This document shows, piece by piece, positions 53,703-57,882 of a DNA stretch of 64,000 nt; within the stretch, counting starts at the first letter, position 1; every line of letters starts with the position of its first letter. Both the position numbers and the translations under genes were made by a program. The notes beneath the pieces were generated by a model, which saw only the letters and a program-made list of their open reading frames with translations, made no database searches and was not told the DNA's origin. Location of the stretch: positions 124,001-188,000 of the IMG/VR virus record IMGVR_UViG_3300042514_000542; one strand, given 5' to 3'.

Positions 53703-53967
53703 GTTTCCAATTTCGATCTAAAAATTTAGACATCTCAGCTAATGCAGGTTTGAATAAATTATTATATGAATAATCCGAGTAGTTAGCGCATTTATATTCG
53801 AATACATCTTCAGAATATCCATTAAGATGGCATCGGATAATCCACTTACCATCTTCATATCTACCATCTATTTTATCAACTCTCCTATGTTTCATATTAG
53901 TCATAACATCCGTCCTCTGAATCATGTTCCAACATCGGTCTAACATAAACCGACCCTTGTGATGCAT
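53695..53967 (-). CDS. Hypothetical protein (true start probably near 53900)
   Basis: Fills the gap between gp55 and gp47. Confidence 0.5.
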   Translation of the reverse strand: MHHKGRFMLDRCWNMIQRTDVMTNMKHRRVDKIDGRYEDGKWIIRCHLNGYSEDVFEYKCANYSDYSYNNLFKPALAEMSKFLDRNWKHD

Positions 53968-54343
53968 CGCTCATTTCATTTTCATAAACCATCTGTTTAT
54001 ATTCTTCCAGACCTTCGTGTTGTCTATTCTCTTTCTTGATACGATTGGAAAATGCATTCCATGCAATCTGATTGAAGTATGAGAATGGATTGAATTCTGA
54101 TTCAATCTTAAATTTCTTATCTTCCAATGCTGAATACATCTTCAAAATGGCATCACCCACCATCTCATCTTTCCATGTGTAATTGATAAACCTATAATTA
54201 TAACTAAGACCTTCAGCAATCTTAACTATGTTCAAGGCTAGTTCATTCGACATTACATCATCCTCGTAGTATTTCTCCAATTGCTGGCGAAATAGTTTTG
54301 ATGACACATAATACTTCTCTTTAACGTCTTTATTTGTTATCAT
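53897..54343 (-). CDS. 55: Late transcription sigma factor (gp55)
   Basis: KIAEGLS...FINYTWKDEMVGDA, NPFSYFNQIAWNAF..RIKKE. Confidence 0.93.
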   Translation of the reverse strand: MITNKDVKEKYYVSSKLFRQQLEKYYEDDVMSNELALNIVKIAEGLSYNYRFINYTWKDEMVGDAILKMYSALEDKKFKIESEFNPFSYFNQIAWNAFSNRIKKENRQHEGLEEYKQMVYENEMSDASQGSVYVRPMLEHDSEDGCYD

Positions 54344-55077
54344 AATTCTTTATTCTTTCTTGGTCGTTTACTTCCACTATTTCTTAACCTGCTCGCCTCA
54401 CCTATTCTTTTTCTAGTTTCTTCTGAATGGGTGTATGTAGAATTTTTTCTTGATTCTCTCATCTTTTCCTTTGTCTCTTCTGATAGAGGGATTCCCACCT
54501 TAAGTTGTCTCAATTTTTCTTTAGTTTCTTCACTCGTCTTATACCCCAATCTTACATTTCTCATTTTTTCCTTGGTTTCATCCGATACTTTCCTCCCCAA
54601 ATTAGACTTTCTATTTTTTTCATTAGATTCTTTTGAATGGTGTTTACCTATTCTCGAAAGCCTTATTTTTTCTCTAGTTTCTTCGGATTTTGGTTTCCTC
54701 ATTTTTTCTTTAGATTCTTCTGAATGATAATATCCGGTTCTATCTCGGGAATATTTGCATATATTATAACCTATATCATTATTTGTAGAATCTAGTAGTG
54801 ATATATAATGAGATTCTAGTTCTAATAGATCCGTATTATCTTTAAATTTATCAAAATTTTCATAGATCTCTAATATCTCAATAGTGAATGAATTCCATCC
54901 ATATTTTTTAATAACGTGTTGTAAATAACACTTGCCTTGCTTTTTATTTTCACAATATTTATGAGATATAAATCTATTTTTCAGGTTTATCGATTTTCCC
55001 ACATATATCTTATTTGTCACACCACATGTTAATTTATATACTCCAGCAACATTTTTATATTCAGAATAATTATTCAT
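54340..55077 (-). mobile_element. GIY-YIG homing endonuclease with NUMOD3 repeats
   Basis: GVYKL...IYVGKS, GYNICKYS, SEETKEK repeats. Confidence 0.92.
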
Positions 55078-55081
55078 ATAA

Positions 55082-56530
55082 TTATTTAGATGAAAGGTTT
55101 AGTTCAGTCTCCTTCCACGGTATCTGTTCGTCGTCATAAAATGTCTTTCTAAGATCTGCATGTTCAGTGGATGATTTCATATTATCATACAAATCGAAAA
55201 TTGTAAGTAAATCTTTACTATGATGTAATCTTAATCCACGACCGATTGACTGAACTATTCGAACGAATGATTTACCATTACCAGCGAACATGACATAATG
55301 TAAATTCTTAACATTGATACCAGTTGAGAAAATGGATGCCATGGCAACACATACGATATTATCCTGCGATTCCATTCTCTCGATTATAGCCATTCTCTCT
55401 AATACGGGCATCGCACCACTAACAAAATAAAATTCCTTGTCGTCAAATTTTAGATGTTCTGATAAATGCTCACCATGTTCCAGTCTATTGACTAGTATAA
55501 GAATATTCTTATTCAATTTAGATACTATTTTTCGTATGGTATTATTACGAGTCTCATCAGTATGAATAAATTCCAATTCTTTCTTATATCCTCTTGGTGG
55601 ATGTTTATGGATTAGTTTTATAACTCTGATCGTAGCATGGGCTAAAAACTTAGCATCCCTAAGTTCCTTTGAATTTTTCTCGTATATAATCGGACCGAAT
55701 GTTCCTATGATTTTCCACACATCAATTTTCTCTTTCGGTAAAGTTCCAGTAAACCCGAACTTGTTGGGAGTTTTTATCTTGGATAGGATTTTTGTCATCA
55801 CATTTCCAAGTTTGGTCTGGTGACACTCATCCCTCAATACCAGATCGACATCCAATAAATTTGTAAAGTTCCCGAATTGGGAACACAAACATTCAGTATT
55901 GACTATAATGACTTCCGTATCCGTTAAAGGTAACTTATAATTTCCCTTGGTATCAGTCTCGCCTGTCCATCCAGAGAAAGTAAACGAAACTTCGTATTCC
56001 TTAAAGTCATTCAACAACTGATGAACCAATCCTGTGCCGGGAACAACGAGTAAACATTTCACATTCCCTTTGATTTTTTTCCAATTCTCGATAAGAGATG
56101 CTTGAATCAAAGACTTACCACCACCTGTTGCCACCACAACAGTCCCACGACCCACTTTTAGGCAAGTTTCAACTGTTTCCACCTGATAGTCCCTCAAAGG
56201 ATACTTAAGCCCGTCAAATAGCTCATAGTCCTTAAAACCGCACATCAGACATTCCTTAAAATTATCTGTATAAGTTATTTCTGATATAGATTCGGATATA
56301 AGAAATTTTCGAATATCAACAAACAATCCAAAATCAAATAATCCACTGGCTTGAATAGCATACTTTCTATCAGGAATTTTGGATTTCTTACCAAGACTCT
56401 TAGCTTTATGATTTACAAAAGAGGCAGATGCATCCTTTTCTGAGAAATGGTTACGAACAAACGTCAAGATTGAATCATCACAGATCAATCTTCCTTTTCT
56501 ATAGGATTTGTCGTAGTCGAATGTGATCAT
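55082..56530 (-). CDS. uvsW: SF2 DNA helicase
   Basis: LRDYQ, ATGGGKS, DECH, GFTGT, STGIN, QSIGRGLR. Confidence 0.93.
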   Translation of the reverse strand: MITFDYDKSYRKGRLICDDSILTFVRNHFSEKDASASFVNHKAKSLGKKSKIPDRKYAIQASGLFDFGLFVDIRKFLISESISEITYTDNFKECLMCGFKDYELFDGLKYPLRDYQVETVETCLKVGRGTVVVATGGGKSLIQASLIENWKKIKGNVKCLLVVPGTGLVHQLLNDFKEYEVSFTFSGWTGETDTKGNYKLPLTDTEVIIVNTECLCSQFGNFTNLLDVDLVLRDECHQTKLGNVMTKILSKIKTPNKFGFTGTLPKEKIDVWKIIGTFGPIIYEKNSKELRDAKFLAHATIRVIKLIHKHPPRGYKKELEFIHTDETRNNTIRKIVSKLNKNILILVNRLEHGEHLSEHLKFDDKEFYFVSGAMPVLERMAIIERMESQDNIVCVAMASIFSTGINVKNLHYVMFAGNGKSFVRIVQSIGRGLRLHHSKDLLTIFDLYDNMKSSTEHADLRKTFYDDEQIPWKETELNLSSK

Positions 56531-56919
56531 TCCATTTCTAATTTTTTATGATCAATTCGATTTTTCATATCTTGATGAATCCAAGAAATCATATTCACTA
56601 CACGATCCAGATATTCTATCAGGAATTCCAGTTCAGCAAGTCTTTCGTTGATATCTTCCAACTTGGAATCATTCTCAATGCCATCCAATGTAGTTTTTGA
56701 TAAGTTGACAACACCTGACGCAACTCGACTTTCGATAAGAGCGTCTTTAATCTTCTTCTTAGCCTTGATAAGTTTTGATTTATCAATCTTTGCTAAGATC
56801 AAACGATAAATCCATGAATGTTTTACCGCTGGAATTCTTCTCAAGCGATCATCCATGTTAAAATCATCAAATTTTAGGAACTCGATTATCTCCTGTTGGT
56901 ATTCTTCAAGTTTACTCAT
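56527..56919 (-). CDS. uvsY: Recombination mediator UvsY-like
   Basis: 130 aa helical protein, IPAVKHSW, DMKNRID, directly upstream of uvsW. Confidence 0.75.
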   Translation of the reverse strand: MSKLEEYQQEIIEFLKFDDFNMDDRLRRIPAVKHSWIYRLILAKIDKSKLIKAKKKIKDALIESRVASGVVNLSKTTLDGIENDSKLEDINERLAELEFLIEYLDRVVNMISWIHQDMKNRIDHKKLEME

Positions 56920-56932
56920 CTCGTATCTTGAT

Positions 56933-56960
56933 AGTATAAATACATATATGAGATTGTCAA
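56933..56960. promoter_or_regulatory. Overlapping divergent early (-) and late (+) promoters
   Basis: TTGACA-N16-TATACT on - overlaps TATAAATA (56935-56942) on +. Confidence 0.75.
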
Positions 56961-57196
56961 TAGAAGAACAAACAAAACTTGCAAATATTTACGAAACTAA
57001 GGTGTTAGTTGAAATGGATGTAGCGGGAATTATGGGTGGTGCGCCAACTTCTGGTGGTAGTCTTGAGAATGTTGATGGTTATGCCGCTGGGGATAATAGG
57101 ATTCCTAAAATCTTAGGTGGTATTCAGACTCGTAGGGGTCTTGCGAAGAAAAATGGTAAGAAAAAGAGGAAAGTTGGCACGAAATCTGCGTCCTAA
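56948..57196 (+). CDS. Small late protein with basic tail
   Basis: Start MRLSIEE after TATAAATA-N5. Confidence 0.7.
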   Translation: MRLSIEEQTKLANIYETKVLVEMDVAGIMGGAPTSGGSLENVDGYAAGDNRIPKILGGIQTRRGLAKKNGKKKRKVGTKSAS

Positions 57197-57438
57197 TAAG
57201 TTATTATAATTGTTATAACTACTTTATAACTATTTCTTATTCTTTATTGTACATTAATATATAATAACTATAACTATATTAATAGTACCTAGCCCGCCCA
57301 CCACCCCTTAAGTATAACTACAATAACAGAAAGTCAATAGGGTAAATTGAAAATAGTTGAAAAAAGAAAATTTACTACTAATTAGTAGTAGTTAGTATAG
57401 TAAGTTATAGTTATTGTACAATAATAGAAAGAAACAAA
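57197..57438. other. Candidate replication origin / structured non-coding region
   Basis: Longest intergenic region; ATAACTA repeats, 18-bp and 14-bp palindromes, isolated G-rich tract. Confidence 0.5.
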
Positions 57439-57882
57439 ATGGACAACACAACATGGAAAAACCTACCAGAAGATTACAGTGACATTTTCGGCTTCGTTTA
57501 CATAATTAAAAATCATCACCCAGAAGCGATTAAAAAATACTACATAGGTTGTAAACAGTGTCAGAAAAGAGTGAAGAAGAAACCATTAAAGGGTAAAACA
57601 AGGAATAGAATACAGTTCAAGGATAATGATGTTCTAAAGTATTGGGGATCGTCAAAAGAATTACTAGCAGACATTGAGAATTATGGTATAGAACATTTCA
57701 CAAGAGAAGTTATACAACTATGTGATTCAAAGTTTGATATGAAGTATTCTGAACTTCATTGGCAGTTACTCACAAATGCTTTATTGGATAGTAGGTTTTA
57801 CAATGGGATCATTAACATTCGTCTAGTAGCACCGAAAAATTACGTTGACAAACCAAGAAGTCTCGATACACTCAATTTATGA
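57439..57882 (+). CDS. Short GIY-YIG-family nuclease
   Basis: GFVYII...YYIGCKQ, YWGSS, FTREVI, FYNG. Confidence 0.75.
   Translation: MDNTTWKNLPEDYSDIFGFVYIIKNHHPEAIKKYYIGCKQCQKRVKKKPLKGKTRNRIQFKDNDVLKYWGSSKELLADIENYGIEHFTREVIQLCDSKFDMKYSELHWQLLTNALLDSRFYNGIINIRLVAPKNYVDKPRSLDTLNL
57845..57872 (+). promoter_or_regulatory. Sigma70-type early promoter
   Basis: TTGACA-N16-TACACT-N6-ATG. Confidence 0.75.

What the first reader, a model, noticed from the sequence alone, without database searches (positions are those of the whole stretch)
57197..57438. Candidate origin beside uvsY with iterons, palindromes and a promoter-proximal G-tract
Seen in sequence: ATAACTA five times (57215, 57226, 57264, 57270, 57314); a 13-bp inverted repeat (57263-57275 / 57403-57415); perfect palindromes TACTACTAATTAGTAGTA (57373-57390) and TTATTGTACAATAA (57411-57424, near-copy at 57244). 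On the - strand, TTGACT-N15-TATACT is followed by GGGGTGGTGGGCGGG (about 57293-57307) and then about 90 nt of almost pure AT. It lies at the major coding-strand switch. Established: T4 ori(uvsY) is a promoter plus an unwinding element that forms an R-loop. Inference: an R-loop origin, possibly stabilised by a G-quadruplex.
Basis: partly seen in the sequence, partly recalled or inferred. Interest (0 to 1): 0.6.

Follow-up and report, generated by a model that had tools for sequence, protein, structure and literature searches.

The report
Conserved promoter, G-run and AT-rich module
In an uncultured lake-water T4-like phage, the gap beside the recombination genes uvsY and uvsW holds a conserved leftward promoter whose transcript starts in a strictly conserved run of G clusters and enters the easiest-to-melt DNA in the genome. 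This layout fits an RNA-primed (R-loop) replication origin, but origin function is unproven.

Summary
The features that matter are not the ones it stressed.

**What is conserved.** Seven related lineages of uncultured lake-water T4-like phages carry the same module between an 82-aa late gene and a SegE-like gene.
- The minus-strand promoter is TTGACT, then 15 nt, then TATA(C/A)T. The hexamers and the spacer length never change, while the spacer sequence varies freely.
- A G tract, GGG(G)-n-GG-n-GGG-n-GGG, starts 3-4 nt after the -10. Only its three one-base linkers vary.
- An AT-rich stretch follows, 48-324 nt long and 78-92% AT. It holds the least stable duplex of nearly every locus, and the least stable 90 bp of the whole 206.6-kb genome.

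**What is not conserved.** The iterons are only partly conserved. The 18-nt palindrome is specific to this window. The flanking inverted repeats are missing from the more distant lineages.

**GC skew.** The cumulative minimum falls here, but the coding-strand switch explains most of it. It does not locate an origin once gene orientation is removed.

**Verdict.** The best reading is an R-loop origin of the T4 promoter-plus-unwinding-element kind, driven by a sigma-70-type promoter and given a G-cluster or G-quadruplex anchor (confidence about 0.4). The main rival is a regulatory, antisense or small RNA with a 5' G-quadruplex (about 0.33). No RNA or raw-read data exist to decide between them.

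The parts
57311..57337 (-). Promoter P2. The -35 TTGACT is at 57337-57332, followed by a 15-nt spacer and the -10 TATACT at 57316-57311.
   Evidence: Sequence. In alignment A5 the -35 is invariant, the -10 is TATA[C/A]T, the spacer is always 15 nt and its sequence is free in 8 loci of 7 lineages. The tool's own scan misses it because it only allows 16-18 nt spacers.
57293..57307 (-). G-run tract GGGG-T-GG-T-GGG-C-GGG on the non-template strand. It starts 3-4 nt after the -10, so the transcript probably starts inside the first run.
   Evidence: It is identical in 5 lineages. It reads GGG-A-GG-T-GGG-T-GGG in L019/L023 and GGG-T-GG-A-GGG-T-GGG in L021/L022. G4Hunter scores 2.0 (20-nt window), among the top four in the genome. 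ViennaRNA places a two-layer G-quadruplex in the minimum-energy fold of all three variants.
57197..57292 (.). AT-rich, low-stability segment downstream of P2, the candidate DNA unwinding element. It also holds most ATAACTA copies and probably the weak terminator of the late gene.
   Evidence: The 90-bp window starting at 57194 is the least stable of all 206,500 windows in the genome (-85.5 kcal/mol against a mean of -111.2, sd 6.2). The equivalent segment holds the least stable 50-bp window in 7 of 8 loci.
57338..57365 (-). A/T-rich block upstream of the -35, possibly an UP element or a factor-binding site.
   Evidence: Nearly identical in window, L004 and L005, and close to it in L011. A T-rich ...TTTC.AA... 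core is kept in all lineages. It is unique within the window.
57244..57275 (.). Left arm of the inverted repeat that flanks the promoter core.
   Evidence: One search gives 23 nt at 87% and 29 nt at 72% complementarity with 57396-57425. The same arms are 36 nt at 97% in L004 and 26 nt at 85% in L008. They are absent in L019.
57396..57425 (.). Right arm of the inverted repeat. It includes the 14-nt palindrome at 57411-57424.
57373..57390 (.). 18-nt perfect palindrome, specific to this lineage.
   Evidence: One search shows it is unique in the genome. It falls in an insertion that is absent from all relatives.
56933..56960 (-). Proximal early promoter P1 (TTGACA, 16 nt, TATACT), ending 13 nt upstream of the uvsY start codon. 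It overlaps the T4-type late promoter TATAAATA (56935-56942, plus strand) of the small gene.
   Evidence: The same back-to-back promoter pair is present in L005 and L019.
56948..57196 (+). Conserved 82-aa late gene of unknown function. It converges on P2.
   Evidence: Protein alignments A3 and A4 show 47-78% identity across lineages. It has no Pfam, PHROG or GenBank-phage match.
56527..56919 (-). Probable UvsY recombination mediator.
   Evidence: PHROG phrog_231 at E = 2.8e-6. Pfam UvsY at E = 0.009, below the cut-off.
55082..56530 (-). UvsW-type helicase.
   Evidence: PHROG DNA helicase families. About 30% identity to annotated uvsW genes of T4-like phages.
57439..57882 (+). SegE-like protein with a GIY-YIG domain only. 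It is the right-hand neighbour of the module in every lineage.
   Evidence: Pfam PF19835 at E = 1.1e-21. Conserved neighbour.

Best explanation
The module is a transcription-primed (R-loop) replication origin of the same functional kind as T4 oriF/oriG, meaning a promoter plus a downstream AT-rich unwinding element. It is built differently from the T4 examples.

**Proposed mechanism.** All of the following steps are inferred.
1. Early in infection, host sigma-70 RNA polymerase starts at P2 (57337..57311).
2. The first roughly 15 nt of RNA are G clusters copied from a C-rich template. Such an RNA:DNA hybrid is unusually stable. The displaced G-rich strand, alone or together with the RNA, can also fold into a quadruplex.
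3. The nascent RNA therefore stays annealed behind the polymerase.
4. The hybrid spreads into the adjoining 50-300 bp of exceptionally unstable AT-rich DNA.
5. The RNA primes leftward leading-strand synthesis. The open strand lets the phage helicase-primase load for the rightward fork.
6. Both forks would then run in the same direction as the two diverging gene blocks.
7. Firing would stop late in infection, when the polymerase is switched by gp55 and UvsW strips the R-loops.

**Shown:** the conserved promoter architecture, the conserved G-run pattern, the extreme duplex instability, and the genomic position.

**Inferred:** transcription itself, R-loop formation, quadruplex folding, priming, and origin activity.
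For: 1. **Promoter.** The -35, the -10 and the 15-nt spacing are invariant while the spacer sequence varies, across 7 lineages whose neighbouring late protein is down to 47% identical.
2. **G tract.** All 11 G-run positions are invariant and the only 3 variable positions are the 3 linkers. The chance of that placement is 1/364. The set of loci is not biased by the DNA pattern: a search with the small protein found the same contigs, and all of them with enough flank carry the tract.
3. **Quadruplex potential.** A two-layer G-quadruplex is part of the predicted minimum-energy fold in all variants. G4Hunter scores 2.0.
4. **Unwinding element.** The transcribed AT-rich segment is the least stable 90 bp of the genome and holds the least stable 50-bp window in 7 of 8 loci. 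This holds even though its sequence and length (48-324 nt) are not conserved. T4 unwinding elements are likewise defined by this property and not by sequence (PMC3016281).
5. **Position.** The module lies at the main divergent strand switch and the cumulative GC-skew minimum, as T4 oriE, oriF and oriG do (PMC3016281). It lies 1-2 genes from uvsY and uvsW.
6. **Precedents.** G-rich RNA on a C-rich template favours R-loops (PMC4083084). A G tract anchors the primer R-loop at mitochondrial CSB II (PMC3488243; PMC4176368).
7. **Uniqueness.** The module is unique in the genome and absent from 596 Gb of bacterial genomes.
8. **No need for expression.** uvsY has its own promoter P1 directly upstream, so P2 is not needed to express it.
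Against: - There are no experimental data. Only assembled contigs of DNA runs exist, with no RNA runs and no raw reads for coverage.
- GC skew is dominated by gene orientation (coefficient 0.107 against 0.038 for region). An orientation-corrected scan does not localise an origin here.
- AT-rich, unstable DNA is expected between two converging transcription units. Part of this segment looks like the weak terminator of the late gene.
- The 15-nt spacer predicts a weak promoter.
- The tract has one GG run, so it is not a canonical four-by-GGG quadruplex.
- T4 oriF has neither a G tract nor a -35 element.
- In L005 and L006 the G tract can pair with a C-rich insert that is followed by a terminator-like hairpin. 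That looks like a discrete RNA gene.
- No RNase H of the 5'-3' exonuclease family was detected.
Confidence: 0.4

Rival explanations
1. P2 makes a regulatory RNA with no role in replication. It could be a small RNA, an RNA antisense to the 3' end of the 82-aa late gene, or a long leader of the leftward uvsY-uvsW-gp55 operon. In this reading the conserved 5' G runs form an RNA quadruplex that protects the 5' end, binds a factor, or acts as a seed.
For: - The promoter and the transcript's 5' end are the conserved parts, as expected for an RNA gene.
- An RNA G-quadruplex is predicted in all variants.
- In L005 and L011 the 5' G tract pairs with a C-rich insert about 100-190 nt downstream. A short hairpin and a U run follow it (z = -3.3 to -3.8).
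- In every lineage the transcript is antisense to the late gene.
Against: - There is no conserved secondary structure across lineages. Z-scores range from -3.8 to +1.1.
- No terminator is found in the window. The terminator-like hairpin is seen only in the L005/L006 insert.
- There is no Rfam match.
- Everything beyond about +25 is free to vary in sequence and length, including a 9-nt tandem expansion in L011.
- An early antisense RNA against a gene that is only transcribed late has no obvious purpose.
- This reading does not explain why the DNA there is the least stable in the genome.
Confidence: 0.33
2. The module is a protein-operated control region. The ATAACTA/TTATAAC repeats, the TTATTGTACA palindromes and the C-rich block would be binding sites for a phage or host DNA-binding protein. 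That protein would either act as an initiator at an iteron-type origin, as proposed for T4 oriE, or as a repressor that loops the two inverted arms around P2.
For: - The repeats are significantly enriched.
- The inverted arms co-vary between window, L004 and L008.
- T4 oriE combines an early promoter with iterons (PMC3016281).
Against: - The repeats are irregularly spaced, with start-to-start distances of 11, 38, 6 and 44 nt.
- Only 3 of 5 are kept in L004 and none are recognisable in L021/L022.
- The inverted arms are missing in L019.
- No initiator or repressor gene is identifiable nearby.
- The motifs are not used elsewhere in the genome.
Confidence: 0.1
3. The module is an invertible promoter switch. 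The inverted repeats would be recombination sites, and flipping the core of about 90-125 bp would redirect P2 from the leftward genes to the rightward genes.
For: Inverted repeats of 23-36 nt flank a promoter-bearing core in window, L004 and L008.
Against: - The genome encodes no serine or tyrosine recombinase, although the control genomes gave matches.
- All 7 lineages have the core in the same orientation. The contigs laid from 4 runs show no strand-changing joints.
- The arms are absent in L019.
Confidence: 0.02

Closest known systems
T4 oriF (ori(uvsY)) and oriG (ori(34)): R-loop origins made of a promoter and a downstream unwinding element
   Same: - A promoter fires into an AT-rich, easily unwound segment of about 50-100 bp whose sequence is not itself constrained.
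- It lies at a transcriptional divergence and compositional switch next to uvsY and uvsW.
- The transcript runs toward uvsY.
- A UvsW helicase is available to dismantle R-loops late in infection (PMC3016281; T4 annotation).
   Different: - T4 uses a MotA-dependent middle promoter with a MotA box at -30. Here there is a sigma-70 -35 hexamer, and no MotA or AsiA was detected (though that search had no positive control).
- T4 oriF has no G tract.
- T4's primer RNA is the uvsY mRNA itself. Here uvsY has its own promoter P1, and P2 lies about 370 bp further upstream, beyond a late gene.
Mitochondrial light-strand promoter and conserved sequence block II primer site (hybrid G-quadruplex R-loop)
   Same: A promoter is followed by a conserved G-run tract on the non-template strand. 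That tract is thought to lock the nascent RNA to the DNA and so make a replication primer (PMC3488243, PMC4176368).
   Different: - CSB II lies about 100 nt or more downstream of its promoter (from my own knowledge, not checked here) and has long G runs. It works by stopping transcription.
- Here the tract is at the very start of the transcript and is short, with runs of 3-4, 2, 3 and 3 G.
- Termination at the tract is not indicated here.
- The polymerase and the lineage are unrelated.
ColE1 RNA II primer formation
   Same: Host RNA polymerase makes a transcript that forms a persistent hybrid at the origin, helped by a G-rich RNA segment pairing with a C-rich template stretch (my own knowledge of Masukata and Tomizawa, 1990). 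In L005 and L006 the G tract could alternatively be held in an RNA stem, which recalls control by RNA folding.
   Different: - There is no sequence or structural similarity.
- ColE1 RNA II is about 550 nt and highly structured.
- No antisense RNA I counterpart was identified here.
T4 oriE (early promoter plus 12-nt iterons)
   Same: It depends on an early sigma-70-type promoter, has clustered short direct repeats of unknown role, and lies near a strand switch (PMC3016281).
   Different: T4's iterons are evenly spaced and conserved in related phages. The repeats here are irregular and differ between lineages.

Membership tests
T4-type R-loop origin (oriF/oriG class) | A promoter active before late transcription lies within the minimal origin | tested here: met
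   A sigma-70-type promoter is conserved in 7 lineages, with a free spacer sequence. Its activity was not measured.
T4-type R-loop origin (oriF/oriG class) | An A+T-rich unwinding element lies immediately downstream of the promoter | tested here: met
   It holds the least stable 90-bp window of the genome and the least stable 50-bp window in 7 of 8 loci.
T4-type R-loop origin (oriF/oriG class) | The promoter is MotA-dependent (MotA box at -30 instead of a -35 element) | tested here: not met
   A canonical TTGACT -35 is present. MotA and AsiA families were not found, though that search had no positive control. T4 oriF shows the MotA-type promoter.
T4-type R-loop origin (oriF/oriG class) | A persistent R-loop forms, and the segment supports autonomous or early replication | not testable with these tools
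   Only assembled contigs of DNA runs are available, with no RNA runs and no raw reads.
T4-type R-loop origin (oriF/oriG class) | Accessory enzymes are encoded: UvsW helicase and RNase H | tested here: inconclusive
   UvsW is present at 55082-56530. The 5'-3' exonuclease N-terminal domain family (which I take, from memory, to include T4 RNase H) was not detected, and a divergent enzyme is not excluded.
G-quadruplex-anchored primer site (mitochondrial CSB II type) | A G-run tract lies on the non-template strand downstream of the priming promoter, with the runs conserved and the linkers free | tested here: met
   The 11 G positions are invariant and only the 3 linkers vary across 7 lineages.
G-quadruplex-anchored primer site (mitochondrial CSB II type) | A canonical quadruplex motif with four runs of at least three G | tested here: not met
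   One run is GG in every variant. Only a two-layer, bulged or G-vacancy quadruplex is possible. A two-layer form is predicted.
G-quadruplex-anchored primer site (mitochondrial CSB II type) | Quadruplex folding and transcript termination or primer formation at the tract | not testable with these tools
   This needs circular dichroism, melting and in vitro transcription.
Iteron-type origin | Several regularly spaced direct repeats are conserved among relatives, with a cognate initiator gene | tested here: not met
   The spacing is 11, 38, 6 and 44 nt. Only 3 of 5 copies are kept in L004 and none in L021/L022. No initiator gene is recognisable.
Invertible promoter (inverton) | Inverted repeats flank a promoter, a site-specific recombinase is present, and both orientations occur in populations | tested here: not met
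   Inverted repeats are present in some lineages. No recombinase is encoded. Only one orientation is seen in all contigs and runs.
Small RNA gene | A promoter, a terminator and a conserved fold | tested here: inconclusive
   The promoter is present. No terminator is found in the window; a terminator-like hairpin is seen only in L005 and L006. There is no common fold and no Rfam family.

The most novel reading that the evidence does not exclude
The G-run tract (three GGG runs and one GG run, with single-base linkers) forms a quadruplex on the displaced DNA strand, or jointly with the nascent RNA, possibly of the G-vacancy type. This quadruplex locks the P2 transcript into an R-loop that primes phage DNA replication. 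That would make it a bacteriophage counterpart of the mitochondrial CSB II primer site, and the first origin in the T4 superfamily defined by a conserved sequence element.
Probability: 0.22. Interest if true: 0.75.

Novelty: new variant of a known kind. Interest (0 to 1): 0.55.

Why it matters
T4 replication origins share no sequence motif, so they cannot be recognised in the thousands of uncultured T4-like genomes. This module is compact and conserved across seven lineages, and it has three separable parts: a promoter, a G-run tract and an unwinding segment. That makes a precise, testable prediction about where and how a whole group of abundant lake phages starts replication.

If the G runs prove essential, quadruplex-anchored R-loop priming would extend from mitochondria and herpesvirus lytic origins to bacteriophages. 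It would also give a searchable signature for origins in metagenomic phage genomes.

If the module instead encodes a regulatory RNA, it is still a strongly conserved non-coding element with a rare 5' G-quadruplex in a 35% GC genome.

Tried and rejected
- **Close cultured relatives.** Megablast of 4.5 kb against GenBank phages found nothing. tblastn with the 82-aa protein found nothing. UvsW is only about 30% identical to known phages. No cultured relative is available for comparison.
- **RNA families.** Rfam at permissive thresholds gave only one chance-level miRNA hit, outside the element.
- **Promoter and terminator scan.** No terminator was found. P2 itself was missed because the scan only allows 16-18 nt spacers.
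- **GC skew as origin evidence.** A regression and a breakpoint scan show that orientation dominates. The corrected best breakpoints merely isolate an atypical 132-152 kb block, so skew was dropped as a diagnostic.
- **Invertible switch.** There are no recombinases and no strand-changing joints.
- **Expression and coverage.** No RNA run holds the sequence. All holders are Logan contigs, which cannot show starts, ends or copy-number slopes. The metagenome scan returned only contigs already found in the viral collection.
- **Short peptide.** A possible GTG-initiated frame after the G tract was rejected by eye. It lies too close to any ribosome-binding sequence, and an extra base in L005 breaks the frame.
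- **Common RNA fold of the P2 transcript.** None was found.
- **Plus-strand promoter for the SegE-like gene.** No convincing conserved -35/-10 pair was found by inspection. This was left open.

Full report
**Context.** The window is bases 124001-188000 of a single 206,590-bp virus record with 35% GC, rated complete. The genes left of the finding, all on the minus strand, are:
- a late sigma factor, gp55 (53897-54343);
- a GIY-YIG homing endonuclease (54340-55077);
- a UvsW-type helicase (55082-56530);
- a probable UvsY (56527-56919).

UvsW is only about 30% identical to that of any GenBank phage, and megablast finds nothing. The DNA occurs in lake-water and drinking-water metagenomes. This is therefore an uncultured freshwater member of the T4 superfamily.

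**Observation.**
- In 2000 dinucleotide shuffles of the 242-bp region, five copies of ATAACTA never occurred. Any 7-mer present five times had P = 0.007. An 18-nt palindrome had P = 0.0115, and a 14-nt palindrome had P of about 0.1.
- The 94 nt to the left of the G tract are 85% AT.
- The region is at the main strand switch. Genes run mostly on the minus strand from ~45 kb to 180.9 kb and mostly on the plus strand from there round to ~45 kb.
- The cumulative GC skew has its global minimum at ~181 kb, which is window ~57,000.

**Two corrections to the map.**
- The plus-strand frame 56855-57196 is really an 82-aa gene at 56948-57196. It is conserved as a protein in all relatives. A T4-type late promoter, TATAAATA (56935-56942), precedes it.
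- On the opposite strand, overlapping that late promoter, lies a strong early-type promoter, TTGACA-16 nt-TATACT (56960..56933). It ends 13 nt before the uvsY start codon. I call it P1.

So uvsY has its own promoter. The promoter in the finding, P2, is a second and more distal one, and its transcript must run antisense through the late gene.

**Relatives.** Pattern and protein searches of IMG/VR gave seven lineages:
- the window (L003 and L012 are the same phage);
- L001/L004;
- L005;
- L006/L011, part of a 211.7-kb contig;
- L007/L008/L009;
- L019/L023;
- L021/L022.

The search with the small protein does not depend on the DNA motif. It recovered the same contigs, and every one with enough flanking DNA carries the element. 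The pattern has no match in 596 Gb of bacterial and archaeal genomes.

The module always lies between the small late gene and a SegE-like GIY-YIG gene (Pfam PF19835). Its linkage to uvsY is looser, because L005 has four extra genes in between.

**What is conserved (alignment A5).**
- The -35 TTGACT is invariant.
- The -10 is TATACT or TATAAT.
- The spacer is always 15 nt, but most of its positions vary. This is the classic signature of a working promoter.
- The G tract begins 3-4 nt after the -10, so transcription probably starts in its first run.
- Five lineages have GGGG-T-GG-T-GGG-C-GGG. L019 has GGG-A-GG-T-GGG-T-GGG, and L021/L022 have GGG-T-GG-A-GGG-T-GGG.
- All 11 G-run positions are invariant, and the only three variable positions are the three linkers. 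The chance of that placement is 1/364.
- Against L004, overall identity is 0.69, the core (57288-57356) is 0.90 and the AT-rich left part is 0.81. The flanking genes range from 0.59 to 0.79. The core is thus among the best-conserved stretches, though some 60-nt coding windows reach 0.93.

**Quadruplex potential.** G4Hunter gives 2.0 over 20 nt, among the top four in the genome. ViennaRNA with quadruplex energies puts a two-layer quadruplex in the minimum-energy fold of all three variants. One run has only two G, so the motif is not canonical. A bulged or G-vacancy form is conceivable but untested.

**Downstream segment.**
- Nearest-neighbour duplex energies show that the 90-bp window starting at 57194 is the least stable of the whole genome (-85.5 kcal/mol; mean -111.2, sd 6.2). 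At 60 bp it ranks second.
- In 7 of 8 loci the least stable 50-bp window of the whole locus falls between the G tract and the stop codon of the late gene.
- That segment varies from 48 to 324 nt. It is unalignable between distant lineages and contains a 9-nt tandem expansion in L011.
- The conserved feature is therefore a physical property, not a sequence. This is how T4 unwinding elements behave (PMC3016281).
- Part of the segment may also be a weak terminator for the late gene. It has an AU hairpin made by AGTTAT and ATAACT, followed by a T-rich run. This is my reading of the sequence. It would account for the first one or two 'iterons'.

**What is not conserved.**
- Only 3 of the 5 ATAACTA copies persist in L004. 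None persist in L021/L022.
- The 18-nt palindrome lies in an insertion found only in this window.
- The inverted arms flanking the core are striking in L004 (36 nt, 97%). They are present in the window and in L008. They are degenerate in L005 and absent in L019.
- An invertible-promoter reading was tested and rejected. There is no serine or tyrosine recombinase, only one orientation appears in all contigs, and there are no strand-changing joints in four runs.

**GC skew.** Gene orientation explains most of it: the coefficient is 0.107, against 0.038 for the replichore-like region term. After correction for orientation, a scan over all origin and terminus positions does not single out 181 kb. 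The skew minimum is consistent with an origin but is not evidence for one.

**RNA alternatives.**
- The first 120 nt of the P2 transcript show no shared fold. Z-scores range from -3.8 to +1.1.
- Rfam finds nothing, and the window has no terminator.
- L005 and L006 carry a 140-nt insert. A C-rich piece of it pairs with the G tract, and a short hairpin and a U run follow. In that sub-lineage the transcript could be a discrete RNA. A regulatory or antisense RNA therefore remains a serious rival.

**Comparison with T4.**
- T4 oriF is annotated at the start of uvsY, and its primer RNA is the uvsY transcript.
- Its promoter has a MotA box and a TATAAT, and there is no G tract downstream.
- The present module shares the logic of a promoter plus an unwinding element at a strand switch beside uvsY and uvsW. 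It differs in promoter type: sigma-70 here, with no MotA or AsiA detected (which had no positive control). It also differs in exact position, since P1 is the strict counterpart, and in having the G tract.
- The G tract has functional parallels in mitochondrial CSB II (PMC3488243; PMC4176368) and in the general preference of R-loops for G-rich transcripts (PMC4083084).
- A literature search found no description of such an element in phages.

**Verdict.** The origin interpretation is partly supported. The promoter, the G runs and the unwinding-prone DNA are real, conserved and arranged as an R-loop origin would need. Origin activity, the R-loop and the quadruplex are all inferred. I put the R-loop origin at 0.40, a non-replicative RNA function at 0.33, a protein-operated site at 0.10 and an invertible switch at 0.02. 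The remainder is left unassigned.

Noticed in passing
window 56933-56960: An early-type promoter (TTGACA-16 nt-TATACT, minus strand, for uvsY) and a T4-type late promoter (TATAAATA, plus strand, for the 82-aa gene) occupy the same 28 bp back to back. The pair is conserved in L005 and L019. The late start would leave almost no leader before the first ATG.
   Followed up: partly
window 56948-57196: An 82-aa late gene with a basic C-terminus is conserved in all seven lineages. It has no match in Pfam, PHROGs or GenBank phages, and its function is unknown.
   Followed up: partly
window 54340-55077: A GIY-YIG homing endonuclease sits between gp55 and uvsW here. It is absent from the relative L001, where gp55 directly follows uvsW. 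This looks like a presence/absence polymorphism of a mobile endonuclease.
   Followed up: partly
window 57439-57882: A SegE-like protein consists of the GIY-YIG domain only (147 aa). Unlike typical free-standing homing endonucleases, it is fixed at the same locus in all seven lineages, which suggests a domesticated function.
   Followed up: no
L005 3600-3720 and L011 8100-8180: A roughly 140-nt insert is present only in these two lineages. It carries a C-rich piece complementary to the G tract, followed by a terminator-like hairpin. L011 also has a 9-nt unit (TATAGTAAT) repeated many times in tandem within the AT-rich segment.
   Followed up: partly
L021 1216-3663 (oriented coordinates): The UvsW frame is 815 aa in L021, against 469 aa in its close relative L022. 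This suggests an intein or an in-frame insertion.
   Followed up: no
genome 21470-32161 and 23941-24013 (outside the window): Aragorn finds 23 tRNA genes, most of them (21) clustered here. One has the anticodon CTA, which reads the amber codon, so it is a possible suppressor tRNA.
   Followed up: no
genome 48440-48640 (outside the window): An unusually GC-rich patch with a run of nine C and a hairpin lies among tiny alternating frames, near the cumulative GC-skew maximum. Its nature is unknown.
   Followed up: no
genome 104537-104680 (outside the window): This is the second least stable duplex region of the genome. It lies inside a lone plus-strand frame within the minus-strand block. It was not examined for promoter or origin features beyond one promoter-like match that points away from it.
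   Followed up: no
genome 21430, 25787, 28681 (+) and 58051 (-) (outside the window): A family of near-identical promoters, TTGACA/T followed by a conserved spacer (TTAATTAAAACCGA...) and TAnAAT, lies in and near the tRNA cluster. It looks like a dedicated strong early promoter class.
   Followed up: no
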